A stretch of 63,724 nucleotides of DNA, counting the filler, from Octopus bimaculoides (lineage: Eukaryota): the NCBI RefSeq assembly GCF_001194135.2. It is 7 parts of 5 records of this genome, joined end to end, with 100 filler letters (N's around TTAATTAATTAA, not from the genome) between each part and the next. Parts side by side here need not be neighbours in the genome. Positions count along the whole stretch, not along the records: positions 46,549 to 52,680 come from NC_068990.1; 6 more parts are not named here. The stretch is one strand, 5' to 3'. Within the stretch, counting starts at the first letter, position 1; the number at the start of each line of letters is the position of its first letter. The position numbers were made by a program, and so were the translations under genes. Positions 46,549 through 52,680 of the stretch are shown piece by piece. The notes under the pieces are model-generated. The model was given only the letters and a program-made list of their open reading frames with translations. It was not told the origin of the DNA and did no database searches.

Positions 46549-47033
46549 CATCCCCTTCTACTCCTATCCATTCCCACATAGTCTAGATGCGTGTCCAAGG
46601 TAGCGTTCCAGTCCCCTACTAATAGTAAAGGTCTTGACGTTCCCAGGAAAACCTCTAGACGTCTAAAGAAATCCGCCTGACCCGTTAAGGACGGTGCATA
46701 CACTGCCATCAGACGGAATGCACATCCGTTTGTGCCATCGATGTCCAAGACAACCAGCCTACCCTCCGGGTCTGGGAATATTGGCCTTACTTTTAGGTTC
46801 AGACTCTTCCGAAAAAGCACCGTGGTACCACCACCACCCATGTTTGGCAGACAGGGAGAAAAATAAATGTCGAATTGTCCGCCAAACATGGACTTGAGGG
46901 CCCGCGGATTACTGAGTCTGGTTTCACTGATAGCTATTATTTCTATGTTCTGTGACCTGATGTCATTTAGAAGATATCCTTGCTTCCAAGCTGACACCAA
47001 GCCACGTACATTTACACAACCTATTTTAAGCAT
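46549..47033 (-). CDS. L1/Tx1-like LINE ORF2 N-terminus: APE-type endonuclease (open up to the gap)
   Basis: MLKIGCVNVRGL...IAISETRL...GGGGTTVLFR...DPEGRLVVLD...AVYAP...LLVGDWNATLD are the standard APE motifs. The ORF is truncated by a scaffold join. Confidence 0.88.
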
Positions 47034-47070
47034 AATTTAGTCGAAAAGCGCAAAAAGACGAGAGAGAATG

Positions 47071-48629
47071 TTACTTACTCATTTCGACAGTTTTACACTG
47101 TTCCTCCTTAGAAATGTCTTGGAGTAAGTCTTTATACAATTTTTTGGAAAGGTATTTTTGGAAACCCCCTACCGCATTTGGATAGAGGGATTTGAGTGTG
47201 TGGTGCTGTGTTAGTGTCAAATGTACTATTTTTATATGTTCTGGTGGTGTTGTTCTTGAGTGATTGTTTGTTTTCAAGTCATCTTCACATATGTTTGTGT
47301 GATATGCAATATAATCCATTAATTTTATGTATTTCGTGTTTATGGCCGAGAGCATTGTATGCGTTTTTGTGGTGTTGGTGTTGGTTTGGTTATGTAAGAG
47401 GCTTTCAGGGGTTGTGTACCTCCCTGCTTTGCTTGTGTTTGGTTTTGTCTTTTTAATCTTTTTCTCTTACCCCCTGTGGCTATCTGCCATTCCACTGGAC
47501 TGTCATCGTTTGACGAAAAGTCTTGCCCTTGGTAAGGGCAAGGCATCAGGTTCTATGCCTGTATTGTGTGGTGTGTGTATTGTTGGGGATTTAGGTTTAG
47601 CATTTGTTTTTTCTTCGTTGGTGTTTGTTTTCTTCGTTGTTGTTCTTGGTATTGGTGTTGGTCTATCTTTTGGTGTTTGTGGTGGTGTTGTATCCCTAAT
47701 TGGTTTCGGTGTTGGAGTTAATTGTGGTGGTGTTGTTTCTTTTCTTGGTGTTGATGGTGATGTCGTTTGGTTTACTTTGTTGATATGTTGTTGATGGGAT
47801 TCTATTTTTTTAAACACTTCTCGGATCACTTGTGGGTTTGGTGGTGTTGGTAGCAAAGGTTGTTTTTTATTTATTTTTTGTTTTGGCTGTAACTGTTCTT
47901 GCTGTTTCTTTTTTTATGCCAAAACGCACTTTGATATTAGGTGCTCTTGGCTGCCACAGAGGTAGCAACACGGTTTTTTACCCTCCGCCACCACATAGAG
48001 GCTTTGTCCATTTTCTAGGTGAATTACGTTCGGCAATTTTTCCAGTGAATCTTGATCCATCTGGATCAAGATTTCAATGGATTTTCCCGTCCAATTGTCA
48101 TTATGGACAACAGTGGTTTCCAAAACGTTGATTGTTTTCAAATGAAAACATATCGCCGAAGTAATCCACTTCGACTCAATTTCAGGAGGGACATTTTTAT
48201 TTTAATTTTACTAACTCTCTGTCCCATGTAGTATGGGACCATGATGAGTTCATCATTTTGTAAGGCTTCCATACTATGTATTTTCGCCTCTTCTTCATTA
48301 TTAAAACGAAATTGCACCGTATTATATTGAGGACCCCAGTTTATATACTGTTTAAGTTTCATAAATTTTTTTTTGCACATTTTTCACTGTCTGTTTTTGT
48401 AATTGGTTCTGTTACTTTATTGCTTTTTCTTATTATTTTGTAAATAATTGTTCTTTTTTCTACGTCTTCTCTCACTTCTTTTGGTGCATGCAATATTAAA
48501 TTTTGTCCGGACGTAGAAAAAAGAGACCTGGTCTCTATGAGTTCTTTGTTTGTAAAATGTAGAATTTCTTTTTTTTTTTAAGCATGACCGCAAAGTTTTT
48601 GTTGTTGTTGTTATTGTCGTCGTCGTTGT

Positions 48630-48679
<50 letters not shown>

Positions 48680-48975
48680 ATGATGGCGTTAGCAGAAATA
48701 GTGTTGACGTCAGAGACTTTAGTGACGTTGCTTGTGTATGGTTTTGTAACCTTGGTTACATTTTCGTTTTTGTTGTTGGTGGTGGTGGTGGCGGTGTTAA
48801 TTTTCATGTTAACACCTGCATCTGTGTGTGCGTTGTCCCTTTCCCTTTTCTTCATTCCTTCGTTCAAATGTGGTGAAGGGAGTGTAGGGAAATCAACGTC
48901 AAACGACACGCTGCAAAATTCAACGTTTGTTTGACGAATGTCTTCATGGTTAGAAGACGCCATCGTCCAAAACAA
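47071..48975 (-). pseudogene. L1/Tx1-like LINE ORF1 (frameshifted), with CCHC zinc knuckle
   Basis: A chain of minus-strand ORF pieces lies directly upstream of the endonuclease. CYLCGSQEHLISKC (CX2CX4HX4C) is at 47926-47967, followed by P/T-rich low-complexity segments. Confidence 0.75.
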
Positions 48976-49207
48976 AAAATGGCTAGAAAGCCGAAATCAA
49001 TTTTTAAAATCTGGAAATATTCCACACAGGGCAGATCTCCGTCGCAAAAAAACTTGCACCACAGAGTCTATAAGTTGTTGTACAACTTTCTATACAAAAT
49101 TCACTTTAGAAAAAATCTTTTGAAAGCATCAAAAAAGGCAAAACTTACGGAGCCGATACGTCTATCGTTCGTCCATAAAGATAGATAGATAGATCGATAG
49201 CTAGATG

Positions 49208-49239
<32 letters not shown>

Positions 49240-49644
49240 TATAGATAGATAAATAGATAGATAGATCTAAAAGATATTTAAAACAAACGCGCGCGCACAC
49301 ATGCACTCTCGCACGCATGAGCACATATTTATATGTATGAACATATATAGGTGTATATAAATATGTATGAGTATGTATGAGTGTGTCATTTTATGTGTGT
49401 GTGTGTGTGTGTGTGTGTTTGTGTGTATGTTTAAGAATACATATATGTATATGAGCACTACCGGATTCCTTGAATCCATAAATTGTGACTTAAATACATA
49501 CATACACACATACATACATGCGTTTGCTTTCATGTTTATTTTTCGCCTTATAAGACGGAAAAAAGTTTGTTTACATATGTTGTTGCATTTCAAAACATAA
49601 AATTATGATATTTAGCGCTTAATTTGACGGTGATGGTTTTCAGC

Positions 49645-49707
49645 GAGGAGTTTAGCTCAAAGGTAGAGTACTCAGCCGATATCTGAGCAGTGCGGATTCT
49701 AGTCCCG
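49645..49707 (+). other. Degenerate tRNA-like head (A/B box remnants)
   Basis: TAGCTCAAAGGTAGAG ... GGATTCTAGTCCC; no intact cloverleaf. Confidence 0.3.
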
Positions 49708-51689
49708 AGGCTGTCTCCTGGCAACATTTTTCCGTCTTAATAGGGAAGAAATGCCGCTAGACCTTTTGTCTAGTGCAATAATGATTTTGCCGGACAGACT
49801 GACTCAGTCATACCAGCAGACTCTTGATTTACTCTTGATGTACTGTTTGGAGTCACGAGCAAGTAATTCAGTTGGTATATTTTCAATGATGAAAAGAATA
49901 ACATCGATTTCTCTGACATTTTGAAAGACGAGCAGAAAGAAACATTGTTGGATGGCAACGCCATACAGAAGCTGCAATTATTGTCACTTGGTAAGGAGAT
50001 GTGTTTAAGGTGATCAAAGAAAAACTATGCAAAATAGCTATTATCGTCTTTGGAATGTTGGGAGTGACCGCTGTAGGTTAGTTCTCTTCAAGATGGACAG
50101 CGTAGTGTTTCTCAACGGGAACCAAGAACAAACTTGTGCGTTTTTGTAGACTTTGTTAGATCTGTGTAGATAGGAAAACATTGATATTTGTGAGAACTGG
50201 GATTACATGAGGAGCACATTGAGGATTCTACAAAGAACAACTAAAGAGAGATATCTATTTTTAACTTGGAAGTTGAATGTCGTGTAGAGATTAATATAAA
50301 GGAAAAATAAGGNNNNNNNNNNNNNNNNNNNNNNNNNNNNNNNNNNNNNNNNNNNNNNNNNNNNNNNNNNNNNNNNNNNNNNNNNNNNNNNNNNNNNNNN
50401 NNNNNNNNNNNNNNNNNNNNNNNNNNNNNNNNNNNNNNNNNNNNNNNNNNNNNNNNNNNNNNNNNNNNNNNNNNNNNNNNNNNNNNNNNNNNNNNNNNNN
50501 NNNNNNNNNNNNNNNNNNNNNNNNNNNNNNNNNNNNNNNNNNNNNNNNNNNNNNNNNNNNNNNNNNNNNNNNNNNNNNNNNNNNNNNNNNNNNNNGTTAG
50601 AAAGCCATAAACACTAAACTCTCCAGTTTAACTTCCCAAATATATCTAACGTTTTATTTTATACTCGCCGTCGTTGCCGGGCAATTTTTATAATAGAATG
50701 TCTTTTATAATTTTTTGTTTATTGCATGTCAGACCATGCCTCCCTCGACAGATAGGCCTCTTGATCAGGACAGATTTGTGCAATATTTCGCAAAAAGACT
50801 TCGTTGAGGATTTTTTCCTCTTTAAATTATTTACATGTCTGTTCGACCGTTTCGCATGACTTTATTCATTAAAACTTATTAAAACTTCAGAAGTTCTTAC
50901 AACTTTGGTCGTTGTAATGCTTTGCTTTCGTTTGTTTAATAAAAATTCCTCCTCCTAATGATTTCGCTTTCATTTCGTGATAGACAGCTATCATGCAGAA
51001 AATGCCAACTTCCAAATCCTGTTTTCTTATTAGGCAAAATTAATTAAACTTTAAACCTCAGTAACTTTTTTCTGCAATTTTTCGAGAACAAATGAATAAC
51101 ATTTTCGGATTTAAAGAGGAAAATTATTTCAATATACCAAATGTGAAAATTTTGACGTAATTTTAAAATCTCACAATAAGTGACAGCAATACGGAAGACC
51201 CTACAAAAGTAGACACACACACATTTACAAACATACTCACAGATCATCACGAGTTTAAAATGGTGCATAGTAGACATTTGTATGTACGTATGCATGTATA
51301 TATGTATATCTGTATGCGTGACTGTATGTGTCTGTGTATGAGTGTTACTTTGCGATGGACAGCAGAAAAGCCACCTACCTCCTCTCTCCTTAAAGCTACA
51401 CATTTCTCACACTTGCCGTTGTCTCCCTTCCTTAGCGTTTTAAAAGTTACTTATGTGCGCGCATGAGTGTGCGTGTGTGTACATGCATGCATCTATGCAT
51501 TTACGAAAGTATGTATTCAGAGTCGCATGGATATGACAGCTTTATTAACGTTACACCCCATTGCCACTCCATATCTGTCGCTTACACAACGCTGTTTTCC
51601 CCTTCCCTGACATCAGTCACACTCACTTCTGCTACTACATCTCCCTCTGACTAATACACTTTGCACGCTTCTTATTTTATCATATAATC

Positions 51690-51848
51690 CCTAGCAGGCC
51701 CAATCTCGATTTTTATTGAAATCCAATCGGCCTATTATTGAACTTGGTGTTAGTTTAACATTTATGCAAAGTTTCATGAAGATTAGTTGGCTGATTTAGG
51801 CAGTAAGATGGTAACAGACAGATATAAATTGCTATCTATATATAAGAT
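51690..51848 (+). mobile_element. Possible HINE-like 3' fragment
   Basis: ATGCAAAGTTTCATGAAGAT...ACAGACAGA...CTATATATAAGAT pattern. Confidence 0.35.
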
Positions 51849-52302
51849 TTGTACTGTTTCCATCAAACTTTCACGAATATATGCTTCACTACGTCAGCCA
51901 GTATCACACTCACATATTCTCACACTATTGTACTTATGCAGAACAGTTAAAATATGTTGCTAAGAGAAGCTTTGGGGCCTCACGTGAATACACTCCGTAC
52001 ACACATACACATTCACATATGTATATACATGCATAGCTATATTTAAACACATACATATACACACAAATGCCTTAAAGTAAATTACAATTTATATATTTCT
52101 TTTTCACTCAAGAGCAGCTCAAAAGGCTTGAAAAGAAAGCTTAATGTCTCAGATATATGTGTTTCTGTGTTTCATAGTGTATGTGTGTGTGTTTCTGTGT
52201 GTGCACGAGCATTTTTTGTGTCTGTATTTTTAGATGTCAATGTGTTTGCGAGTCATTCTTCATCTCTTCTTTATACAATTATGTATCTACATATATATAT
52301 AT

Positions 52303-52680
52303 ATAAAGTGAAGTATATTTGCCATTTAAATGTGGCTGACCCCTAAGGGTGGATGTTACTGTTGCTTTTAGCCCCAGGAGAACATCTCCTCCAGCTGGCT
52401 TATCGACACATATCTGTGTCCTGTCTATTTTTGCCAAGGGAAGTTATCCTTCCCATCTTGATCTGCGATACGTACGGACCCGAGTTTCAGGGTTATTTCC
52501 CTTCTTCAGCGTACGATAATCGCCGACCTTCGATGAGAATGACAATCCCTTGGCAATATATAAGTCTTTTTCCAGTGAAGTTATTCACTGATATCGAAAA
52601 AGTGAAAACAAGCAATGTTAAATCTCTGAACGAGGTGTTAACAGTAACTGCACGATAAAGTGAAGTATATTTGCCATTTA
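52303..52680 (-). mobile_element. Hammerhead-bearing ~352-bp repeat unit (retrozyme-like or Penelope pLTR-like)
   Basis: 26-bp direct repeat ATAAAGTGAAGTATATTTGCCATTTA at 52303-52328 and 52655-52680 (period 352). The second copy runs into a scaffold join. The unit contains the hammerhead and several short hairpins. Confidence 0.65.
52465..52523 (-). ncRNA. Type I hammerhead ribozyme (canonical core, GUC cleavage site)
   Basis: Minus strand reads GCGAT-TAT-CGTACG [CTGAAGA] AGGG-AAATAA-CCCT [GAAA] C-TCGG-G-T-C / CGTACG-T-ATCGC. The CUGANGA and GAAA core is complete. Stem I is 6 bp plus an internal loop plus 5 bp, stem II is 4 bp, and stem III is minimal. Predicted cleavage is between 52477 and 52476. 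Confidence 0.9.

What the first reader, a model, noticed from the sequence alone, without database searches (positions are those of the whole stretch)
52465..52523. Canonical self-cleaving type I hammerhead ribozyme in unannotated DNA
Seen: every conserved core position is present on the minus strand (CUGAAGA, GAAA, A15.1-U16.1, GUC). Stem I is CGUACG/CGUACG extended by GCGAU/AUCGC across a UAU/U internal loop, and stem II is AGGG/CCCU with an A-rich loop. Known: in type I hammerheads loop II docks on a stem I bulge or loop, and animal hammerheads with a 2-bp stem III often cleave as dimers. Here ACUCGGGU is fully self-complementary when G.U pairs are allowed. Inference: this is a recently active ribozyme.
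Basis: partly seen in the sequence, partly recalled or inferred. Interest (0 to 1): 0.9.

Follow-up and report, generated by a model that had tools for sequence, protein, structure and literature searches.

The report
Hammerhead ribozyme in a retrozyme-like repeat
The site carries a complete animal-type (type I) hammerhead self-cleaving RNA motif inside a 352-bp repeat unit of a eukaryotic genome, which fits the already described class of "retrozyme"/satellite repeats that make small circular RNAs, so it is real but ordinary.

Summary
On the minus strand, 52523..52465 holds a full type I hammerhead. It has the core CUGAAGA/GAAA/GUC, a 6-bp helix I continued past a UAU/U internal loop, and a 4-bp helix II with loop AAAUAA. 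Helix III is 2 bp with a 4-nt loop, and ACUCGGGU is self-complementary. Cleavage would fall between 52477 and 52476.

It is not a chance match. A structural descriptor gave 0 hits in 3000 shuffles. A covariance model built only from four published, experimentally cleaving retrozyme hammerheads finds it at 26 bits (E about 3e-6). The best of 75.8 kb of control DNA scored 14 bits.

Rfam Hammerhead_1 matches full length but below threshold (16.1 bits against 34). It does so only when a 65-nt stretch is searched.

The motif sits in a 352-bp unit (52303-52654) whose first 26 nt recur at 52655-52680, where the piece ends. The unit RNA folds into a strongly paired structure (z about -7) with a 39-bp helix extending helix I.

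This matches metazoan non-LTR retrozymes and hammerhead satellite repeats (Cervera & de la Peña 2020). No other copies could be retrieved. Covariation, tandem extent and activity therefore remain untested. It is a new member of a known kind, of low interest.

The parts
52465..52523 (-). Type I hammerhead ribozyme motif, including distal helix I. The predicted cleavage is 3' of C17 (52477), leaving a new 5' end at 52476.
   Evidence: Sequence read. Descriptor: 1 hit against 0 in 3000 shuffles. CM R1 scores 26 bits, E 3.3e-6, over 52471-52515 with all 12 pairs standard. Rfam RF00163 scores 16.1 bits, E 0.089, full-length model 1-45.
52503..52509 (-). Core strand CUGAAGA (C3-A9).
52489..52502 (-). 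Helix II AGGG/CCCU (A10.1-U11.1 at its base) with the 6-nt loop 2 AAAUAA. Loop 2 has a 5' purine and a 3' A, which fits the RNnA loop-2 motif.
   Evidence: Motif definition from PMC2632901.
52477..52488 (-). GAAA core strand, helix III (A-U and C-G, loop UCGG) and the cleavage triplet GUC. ACUCGGGU is self-complementary, which allows an 8-bp intermolecular helix III in a double hammerhead.
   Evidence: Duplex energy -8.9 kcal/mol, and the cofold MFE is the double-hammerhead structure at -42.1 kcal/mol.
52431..52476 (-). 3' arm of the long helix that continues helix I. It includes the single-U side of internal loop 1 at 52470.
   Evidence: In the MFE fold, 39 of these 46 nt pair with 52510-52556. 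There is an 11-nt perfect inverted repeat, 52431-52441 with 52546-52556.
52510..52556 (-). 5' arm of the same long helix. It includes the UAU side of internal loop 1 at 52516-52518.
52303..52654 (-). One full 352-bp repeat unit (GC 0.42) with no protein-family match.
   Evidence: Exact 26-nt direct repeat at a spacing of 352. GC content. The unit RNA, permuted at the cleavage site, folds at -121 kcal/mol with z -6.97. Pfam finds nothing.
52655..52680 (-). Start of a second unit, identical to 52303-52328 and cut off by the end of the piece. Alternatively it is one arm of a long target-site duplication.

Best explanation
This is a genomic copy of a metazoan-type non-LTR retrozyme, also described as a hammerhead satellite repeat. 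At least 1.07 units of 352 bp are visible. Its minus-strand transcript carries a canonical animal type I hammerhead.

The proposed mechanism is inferred from the published family and was not tested here:
1. Read-through transcription of adjacent units takes place.
2. The hammerhead cleaves after GUC (52477|52476). It acts either slowly as a single motif or more efficiently as a double hammerhead. In the double form, the self-complementary ACUCGGGU segments of two units form an extended helix III.
3. The resulting 352-nt linear RNA carries 5'-OH and 2',3'-cyclic phosphate ends and is circularised by a tRNA ligase of the RtcB type.
4. The strongly base-paired circle may then serve as a template for the reverse transcriptase of an autonomous retroelement, either Penelope-like or LINE. 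This would give new tandem copies.

Shown here: the complete motif, its statistical significance, the published architecture, the 352-bp periodicity, the low GC, the absence of coding capacity, and the stable fold with a 39-bp extension of helix I. Inferred: transcription, cleavage, circularisation and mobility.
For: - Motif and coordinates.
- Not chance: 0 of 3000 shuffles gave a descriptor hit.
- Independent model: CM R1 was built only from the coral Amil224, mussel Mg353, and axolotl Ax353 and Ax330 hammerheads (PMC7229834 Supplementary Table 2). The paper tested all four in vitro, and their cleavage ranged from efficient in the coral to weak in the axolotl monomers.
- R1 scores the site at 26 bits, E 3.3e-6. 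The next hit in the piece is 12.2 bits. The best in 75.8 kb of control loci, chosen to share the same core and helix II letters, is 14 bits.
- Rfam RF00163 is the only Rfam match when the 65-nt stretch 52462-52526 is searched, and it spans the full model.
- Architecture: 6 bp / 4 bp / 2 bp plus a palindromic loop equals the 'canonical metazoan HHR' of PMC4209133.
- Internal loop 1 (U opposite UAU) and loop 2 (AAAUAA) have the same layout as the axolotl motifs (U opposite UUC or UGC; loop CAAAAA). They satisfy the conserved contacts of PMC2632901: a 5' U in loop 1, a pyrimidine at the last loop-1 position, and a 3' A in loop 2.
- Repeat context: 352-bp periodicity. Unit size, GC below 50% and lack of coding capacity match the family description.
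- Fold: z -6.97, with the minus strand more stable than the plus strand (-120.3 against -107.6 kcal/mol).
- Dimer: the double-hammerhead cofold is -42.1 kcal/mol, against 2 x -13.7 for two single active folds.
Against: - The Rfam gathering score is not reached (16.1 against 34 bits). The match is lost altogether when 151 nt or the whole piece is searched.
- Only one hammerhead and only 26 nt of a second unit are visible. A tandem array is therefore not demonstrated.
- No second copy of the family was found anywhere. There is thus no conservation or covariation evidence within the family.
- A10.1-U11.1 replaces the usual G-C pair.
- The predicted MFE of the isolated motif pairs CUGA with UCGG, which is an inactive fold 6.3 kcal/mol below the active one. 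The same holds for all four tested hammerheads, so this carries little weight.
- A fold z-score near -7 is not unique in the piece. 47957-48308 reaches about -8.
- No Penelope-like element is seen in the 6.1 kb.
Confidence: 0.85

Rival explanations
1. This is a solitary, dead-on-arrival monomer insertion. A single 326-bp copy would be flanked by a target-site duplication of 26 bp or more. The motif would be intact, but the locus could not release a unit-length RNA or form a double hammerhead in cis. In this reading the feature is a relic, not an active ribozyme locus.
For: Only 26 nt are repeated, and the similarity stops sharply at 52303 next to a (TA)n microsatellite. Monomeric retrozyme derivatives are common in vertebrate genomes (10.64898/2026.07.22.740005). 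Animal retrozymes, when they have target-site duplications, have long ones.
Against: The extent of the repeat is limited by the end of the piece, not by divergence, so it may continue. A 1.07-unit copy is what rolling-circle reverse transcription of a circle would also give. A GCCA/UGGC hairpin in the predicted fold spans the boundary of the 26-nt segment, which hints that the segment belongs to the element.
Confidence: 0.3
2. This is the terminal repeat (pLTR) of an autonomous Penelope-like element whose reverse-transcriptase/GIY-YIG gene lies beyond the end of the piece. In this reading it is not a non-autonomous retrozyme.
For: Penelope-like elements carry type I hammerheads in their flanking repeats (PMC4209133). 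Retrozymes are reported to be related to those repeats. The sequence above 52680 is unseen.
Against: Hammerheads of metazoan Penelope-like elements are 'minimal' variants with no helix III, a long helix II (6-8 bp) and a short helix I (2-5 bp). Here the layout is the canonical 6/4/2. No reverse-transcriptase or GIY-YIG domain is found in the piece. The 352-bp period fits a retrozyme unit.
Confidence: 0.08
3. This is a chance resemblance or an unrelated hairpin-rich repeat with no ribozyme function.
For: The Rfam score is below the gathering cut-off and was filtered out in larger searches. Other parts of the piece also fold unusually well.
Against: 0 of 3000 shuffles gave a descriptor hit. The independent CM gives E 3e-6, 12 bits above any control. 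All 13 core nucleotides, all three helices, the loop-loop signature nucleotides and the repeat context agree at once.
Confidence: 0.03
4. This is a SINE-like hammerhead element of the Schistosoma Sm-alpha type, transcribed by RNA polymerase III from internal tRNA-like promoter boxes.
For: The size (about 330-350 nt) and a type I hammerhead resemble Sm-alpha (mentioned in PMC6155905).
Against: ARAGORN finds no tRNA-like sequence. No box B match was found with up to 2 mismatches, and only poor box A-like matches. There is no Rfam tRNA hit inside the unit.
Confidence: 0.04

Closest known systems
Metazoan non-LTR retrozymes (Cervera & de la Peña 2020, PMC7229834), e.g. mussel Mg353 and axolotl Rtz_353/Rtz_331
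   Same: Both have a type I hammerhead with a 6-bp helix I, a 4-bp helix II, and an 8-nt A-C-NNNN-G-U helix III segment that is self-complementary (mussel ACGCGCGU, axolotl ACACGUGU, here ACUCGGGU). Helix I carries a 1-nt/3-nt internal loop, as in both axolotl motifs. The unit length of 352 bp compares with 350-390 bp in mussel and 330/350 bp in axolotl. GC is below 50%, the unit is non-coding, and the predicted unit RNA is strongly self-paired.
   Different: There is no sequence similarity outside the motif (blastn). The base of helix II is A-U. The helix III palindrome needs two G.U pairs. Only 1.07 units are visible. Expression, cleavage and circularisation are untested. The source organism is unknown.
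Newt/salamander satellite 2 hammerhead (Epstein & Gall 1987; Forster et al. 1988, as cited in PMC6155905 and PMC7229834)
   Same: Both are a repeat of about 330 bp with a type I hammerhead whose weak helix III has a palindromic loop, which permits a double-hammerhead mode of cleavage.
   Different: The newt-type motif has a 1-bp helix III. Here helix III has 2 bp plus a tetraloop, the 'invertebrate-like' form that can cleave as a monomer at moderate rates (mussel about 0.1 per min).
Rfam RF00163 Hammerhead_1
   Same: The match is full length to the 45-position model on the correct strand and in register. The model's helix III consensus ACGcgCGU has the same length as ACUCGGGU.
   Different: The score is 16.1 bits against a gathering score of 34. 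Helix II is not aligned to the model (it is treated as a local insertion). The hit is lost to the filters when more sequence is searched.
Minimal hammerheads of Penelope-like elements (PMC4209133)
   Same: Both have type I topology, occur in repeated DNA of animal genomes, and have a presumed dimeric mode of action.
   Different: Hammerheads of Penelope-like elements lack helix III and the loop-loop contacts. They have a longer helix II and a shorter helix I. The present motif has the canonical helices and loops.

Membership tests
Hammerhead ribozyme, type I | Conserved catalytic core: C3 U4 G5 A6 N7 G8 A9, G12 A13 A14, the A15.1-U16.1 pair, and H17 (not G) at the cleavage site. | tested here: met
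   CUGAAGA, GAAA, A15.1 (52485) paired with U16.1 (52478), and C17 (52477).
Hammerhead ribozyme, type I | Three helices around the core, with helix I open-ended (type I topology). | tested here: met
   Helix I has 6 bp plus 5 bp distal, helix II 4 bp and helix III 2 bp. All 12 modelled pairs are standard in the CM alignment.
Hammerhead ribozyme, type I | Score at or above the curated Rfam gathering threshold for RF00163. | tested here: not met
   16.1 bits against 34, E 0.089, seen only when a 65-nt stretch is searched. There was no hit with 151 nt or 6.1 kb.
Hammerhead ribozyme, type I | Loop 1 / loop 2 tertiary contact signature: a 5' U of loop 1, an extrahelical pyrimidine in loop 1, and loop 2 of the form R...A with a 3' A (PMC2632901). 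| tested here: met
   Internal loop 1 is U (52470) opposite UAU (52518-52516), whose last position is a pyrimidine. Loop 2 is AAAUAA. This is met at sequence level only. The contact itself is not testable here.
Hammerhead ribozyme, type I | G10.1-C11.1 pair at the base of helix II (usual, not absolute). | tested here: not met
   A10.1-U11.1 is present. Compensatory changes at this pair occur in natural cricket hammerheads (PMC2837043), and axolotl HHR_Amex2 has U.U here.
Hammerhead ribozyme, type I | Site-specific self-cleavage giving 5'-OH and 2',3'-cyclic phosphate ends. | not testable with these tools
   This needs an in vitro transcription and cleavage assay.
Canonical metazoan type I hammerhead (PMC4209133) | Helix I of 6 bp, helix II of 4 bp, and helix III of 1-2 bp capped by a 2-4 nt palindromic loop. 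| tested here: met
   The layout is 6 bp / 4 bp / 2 bp plus UCGG. ACUCGGGU is self-complementary with two G.U pairs.
Metazoan non-LTR retrozyme / hammerhead satellite repeat | The hammerhead lies within short tandem repeats of 150-450 bp. | tested here: inconclusive
   The 352-bp period is shown by an exact 26-nt repeat, but the second unit is cut by the end of the piece. TRF reports no array.
Metazoan non-LTR retrozyme / hammerhead satellite repeat | GC below 50%, no LTR/PBS/PPT, and no coding capacity. | tested here: met
   GC is 0.42. The ORFs in the unit have no Pfam match and no homologues. PBS and PPT were not specifically searched.
Metazoan non-LTR retrozyme / hammerhead satellite repeat | The unit RNA is predicted to be highly self-paired. 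| tested here: met
   The fold is -121 kcal/mol with z -6.97, 0 of 100 shuffles as stable, and 59% of bases paired, including a 39-bp closing helix. Caveat: one other region of the piece reaches a similar z.
Metazoan non-LTR retrozyme / hammerhead satellite repeat | Many copies per genome, with the hammerhead more conserved than the rest of the unit. | not testable with these tools
   The source genome is not available. No copy was found in viral contigs, metagenome contigs, the protein collection or the literature.
Metazoan non-LTR retrozyme / hammerhead satellite repeat | Expressed as linear and circular unit-length RNAs. | not testable with these tools
   No RNA data are available.
Penelope-like element pLTR hammerhead | A minimal motif without helix III, with a long helix II and a short helix I, flanking an RT/GIY-YIG ORF. 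| tested here: not met
   The helices are canonical. No RT or GIY-YIG domain is found in the piece. The sequence beyond 52680 is unseen.

The most novel reading that the evidence does not exclude
The unit would represent an undescribed, lineage-specific retrozyme family from an animal group poorly represented in public data. Its hammerhead would tolerate A10.1-U11.1 and a G.U-containing palindromic helix III. It would also escape standard Rfam annotation. The only autonomous element nearby is an APE-type LINE on the same strand, so LINEs rather than Penelope-like elements could be its mobilising partner.
Probability: 0.12. Interest if true: 0.4.

Novelty: new member of a known kind. Interest (0 to 1): 0.22.

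Why it matters
It adds one more locus to a class that is already well documented: animal hammerhead repeats that yield small circular RNAs. Two practical points follow.

First, the curated Rfam threshold and its speed filters miss this well-formed motif. Routine genome annotation will therefore leave such ribozymes unannotated.

Second, if the family proves abundant in the source organism, it offers another natural variant for studying monomer versus dimer cleavage and circRNA production. The variant has an A-U pair at positions 10.1/11.1 and a helix III palindrome with G.U pairs.

Neither point changes current understanding.

Tried and rejected
- **Rfam scans.** Scans of the whole piece (E<=1) and of 151 nt (E<=10) gave no hammerhead hit. 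Only a 65-nt query exposed the sub-threshold RF00163 match. The mir-466, mir-297 and snoRNA hits are low-complexity artefacts.
- **Search for other copies.** All of the following failed:
  - An exact pattern search in viral contigs gave 0 hits.
All were chance matches without helix I or III context and scored at most 14 bits with R1.
  - The 101-aa spurious ORF that spans the unit was used as a protein proxy, with no hits.
  - Exact look-ups of that ORF and of a neighbouring ORF, meant to recover the source contig and see beyond 52680, found nothing on record.
  - Full-text search for the motif letters found 0 papers.
- **Organism identification.** The LINE endonuclease has only three relatives, at 50-60% identity, on Logan contigs from the SRR118693xx runs. 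Those run numbers appear in no searchable paper. The source lineage therefore seems absent from the collections. For that reason I did not spend the last large protein search, the representative search or the bacterial genome scan on it.
- **Similarity to published retrozymes.** blastn of the unit against the four published retrozyme constructs found nothing beyond 8-13 nt words.
- **Structure pair counting.** The MAFFT alignment of the five hammerheads put the helix II gap out of register, so it was not used for this.
- **SINE/tRNA-like promoter idea.** Rejected.
- **Penelope-like context.** Not found.

Full report
**Observation.** The minus strand of 52523..52465 reads GCGAU-UAU-CGUACG-CUGAAGA-AGGG-AAAUAA-CCCU-GAAA-C-UCGG-G-U-C|CGUACG-U-AUCGC. 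All core nucleotides of a hammerhead are present: C3-A9 as CUGAAGA, G12-A14, the A15.1-U16.1 pair, and C17.

- Helix I has a 6-bp proximal part, a UAU/U internal loop and a 5-bp distal part.
- Helix II is 4 bp with a 6-nt A-rich loop.
- Helix III is 2 bp with the loop UCGG.
- Cleavage would fall between 52477 and 52476.
- ACUCGGGU is self-complementary with two G.U pairs (duplex -8.9 kcal/mol).

The one departure from the textbook consensus is A10.1-U11.1 at the base of helix II.

**Is it more than chance?** The bare core pattern is expected 0.07 times per window. A descriptor that also demands the three helices found exactly this site in the piece. It found no site in 3000 dinucleotide-preserving shuffles, both strands.

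**Rfam.** cmscan gave no hammerhead hit when the whole piece (E<=1) or 151 nt (E<=10) were searched. With 65 nt, RF00163 Hammerhead_1 was the only match. It covered 52471-52515 on the minus strand and the full model 1-45, at 16.1 bits and E 0.089, against a gathering score of 34. Helix II was skipped by the alignment. The curated membership threshold is therefore not met, and the earlier misses are filter effects.

**An independent model.** To get a test that did not depend on the Rfam seed, I took the hammerheads of four retrozyme constructs printed in Supplementary Table 2 of Cervera & de la Peña 2020 (PMC7229834). These are coral Amil224, mussel Mg353, and axolotl Ax353 and Ax330. The paper tested all four in vitro. 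I aligned them and built covariance model R1 without the window sequence.

- With filters off, R1 finds 52471-52515 (minus) at 26 bits, E 3.3e-6 (rough calibration). All 12 modelled pairs are standard.
- The next hit in the piece is a plain hairpin at 12.2 bits.
- As controls I used 75.8 kb of loci. Seventeen of them were selected precisely because they contain the same CTGAAGAAGGG...CCCTGAAAC letters. The best R1 score among them is 14 bits.

**Architecture against the literature.** PMC4209133 defines the canonical metazoan type I hammerhead as follows: helix I of 6 bp and helix II of 4 bp, interacting through conserved loop nucleotides, and helix III of 1-2 bp capped by a 2-4 nt palindromic loop. 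That weak helix III makes single motifs poor cleavers but allows an active dimer in tandem repeats. The present motif fits each item.

- Its 8-nt helix III segment ACUCGGGU has the same layout as mussel ACGCGCGU and axolotl ACACGUGU.
- Its internal loop 1 (U opposite UAU) has the same 1/3 layout as the axolotl motifs (U opposite UUC or UGC).
- Its loop 2, AAAUAA, resembles axolotl CAAAAA and Schistosoma CAAAUA.
- PMC2632901 identifies the conserved tertiary contact as the 3' A of loop 2 pairing with the 5' U of loop 1, plus an extrahelical loop-1 pyrimidine. In Schistosoma that pyrimidine is the last position of the internal loop. All three nucleotides are present here.
- Changes at 10.1/11.1 occur in natural hammerheads. 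Cricket pDo500 shows compensatory changes there, and axolotl HHR_Amex2 has U.U.

**Thermodynamics.** The MFE of the isolated 59-mer (-20.0 kcal/mol, z -2.6) pairs CUGA with UCGG and lies 6.3 kcal/mol below the active fold. All four tested hammerheads likewise have non-hammerhead MFEs, so this is not evidence against function. Cofolding two copies gives the classical double hammerhead as the MFE: intermolecular helices I and III at -42.1 kcal/mol, against 2 x -13.7 for two single active folds.

**Context.**

- A 26-nt exact direct repeat (52303-52328 = 52655-52680) defines a period of 352 bp. The second copy is truncated by the end of the piece. On the other side the similarity ends sharply at 52303 against a (TA)n run. 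At least 1.07 units are therefore present. Whether the array continues cannot be seen.
- The unit has GC 0.42. Its ORFs match no Pfam family and have no homologues.
- Permuted to start at the cleavage site, the 352-nt RNA folds at -121 kcal/mol. Its z-score is -6.97, and 0 of 100 shuffles are as stable.
- Thirty-nine of the first 46 nt (52476-52431) pair with 52556-52510. Helix I is therefore the inner end of a long closing helix, which includes an 11-nt perfect inverted repeat.
- Forcing the active hammerhead in this context costs 5 kcal/mol.
- The minus strand folds better than the plus strand (-120.3 against -107.6 kcal/mol).
- As a caution, background z-scores in this piece average about -2, and one unrelated region (47957-48308) reaches about -8.

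The rest of the piece is eukaryotic draft assembly.

- It contains an N gap at 50314-50596 and many microsatellites.
- On the minus strand at 46549-47033 lies the start of a LINE ORF2 with an APE-type endonuclease (Pfam Exo_endo_phos).
- No reverse transcriptase of Penelope type is present.
- There is no tRNA-like sequence or pol III box B.

**What it is.** These features match the metazoan non-LTR retrozymes, also known as hammerhead satellite repeats. The published family has the following traits (PMC7229834; 10.64898/2026.07.22.740005):

- 150-450 bp repeats with type I hammerheads;
- GC below 50% and no coding capacity;
- unit-length, highly self-paired linear and circular RNAs;
- circularisation by RtcB-type ligase;
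- probable mobilisation by Penelope-like elements or LINEs.

The family's sequences are described as species-specific. This agrees with the absence of similarity to the four published units outside the motif.

**Limits.** No further copy could be retrieved. Viral contigs gave 0. The single metagenome scan gave only chance hits. The protein proxy and exact look-ups gave nothing, and the literature string search gave nothing. The nearest LINE relatives are only 50-60% identical and come from one set of Logan runs, so the source lineage appears to be missing from the collections. Within-family conservation, covariation, copy number, tandem extent and any activity therefore remain untested. 'Recently active' is an inference.

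**Verdict.** This is a real, complete animal-type type I hammerhead in a retrozyme-like 352-bp unit. It is a new member of a well-known kind, of low interest to a specialist. The one practical lesson is that Rfam's threshold and filters miss it.

Noticed in passing
window 46549-47033 (-), and 47914-48141 (-): This is the 5' part of a LINE. An ORF2 start encodes an APE-type endonuclease (Pfam Exo_endo_phos, E 7e-10) and is cut by the piece edge. An upstream ORF carries a CCHC zinc knuckle (CYLCGSQEHLISKC), like a LINE ORF1. The only relatives in the 5.8-billion protein collection are three Logan proteins at 50-60% identity, from the SRR118693xx runs.
   Followed up: partly
window 47957-48308: This region folds unusually well on both strands (z about -8 on the minus strand and -5.8 on the plus strand in a 352-nt window). 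It contains a perfect 12-nt hairpin, 48048-48059 with 48062-48073. It lies inside the presumed LINE ORF1 / 5' region.
   Followed up: no
window 49538-49567 and 49723-49752: A 30-nt inverted repeat (80% complementary, 155 nt apart) brackets a weak tRNA-like Rfam hit at 49653-49708 (21.5 bits, below threshold). It may be a MITE or SINE remnant.
   Followed up: no
window 49400-49522, 51278-51342, 51994-52060: Sub-threshold Rfam matches to mir-466, mir-297 and mir-1277 fall on TG/TA/ATAC microsatellites. They are low-complexity artefacts, not microRNA genes.
   Followed up: partly
window 50314-50596: A run of 283 N marks an assembly gap, showing that the piece comes from a scaffolded draft genome.
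   Followed up: yes
window 52436-52450 and 52489-52503: The helix II region of the hammerhead is 80% complementary to a segment 40 nt downstream in the RNA. That segment itself forms a GGGAAG/CUUCCC hairpin. This allows an alternative pairing that would disrupt the hammerhead. It may be a conformational switch of the kind known in viroid-like RNAs.
   Followed up: no
window 52462-52526 compared with 52420-52570 and 46549-52680: The Rfam Hammerhead_1 match appears only when a 65-nt stretch is searched. It disappears with 151 nt or 6.1 kb, although its E-value should still have passed the cut-off for 151 nt. The speed filters hide this motif.
   Followed up: yes
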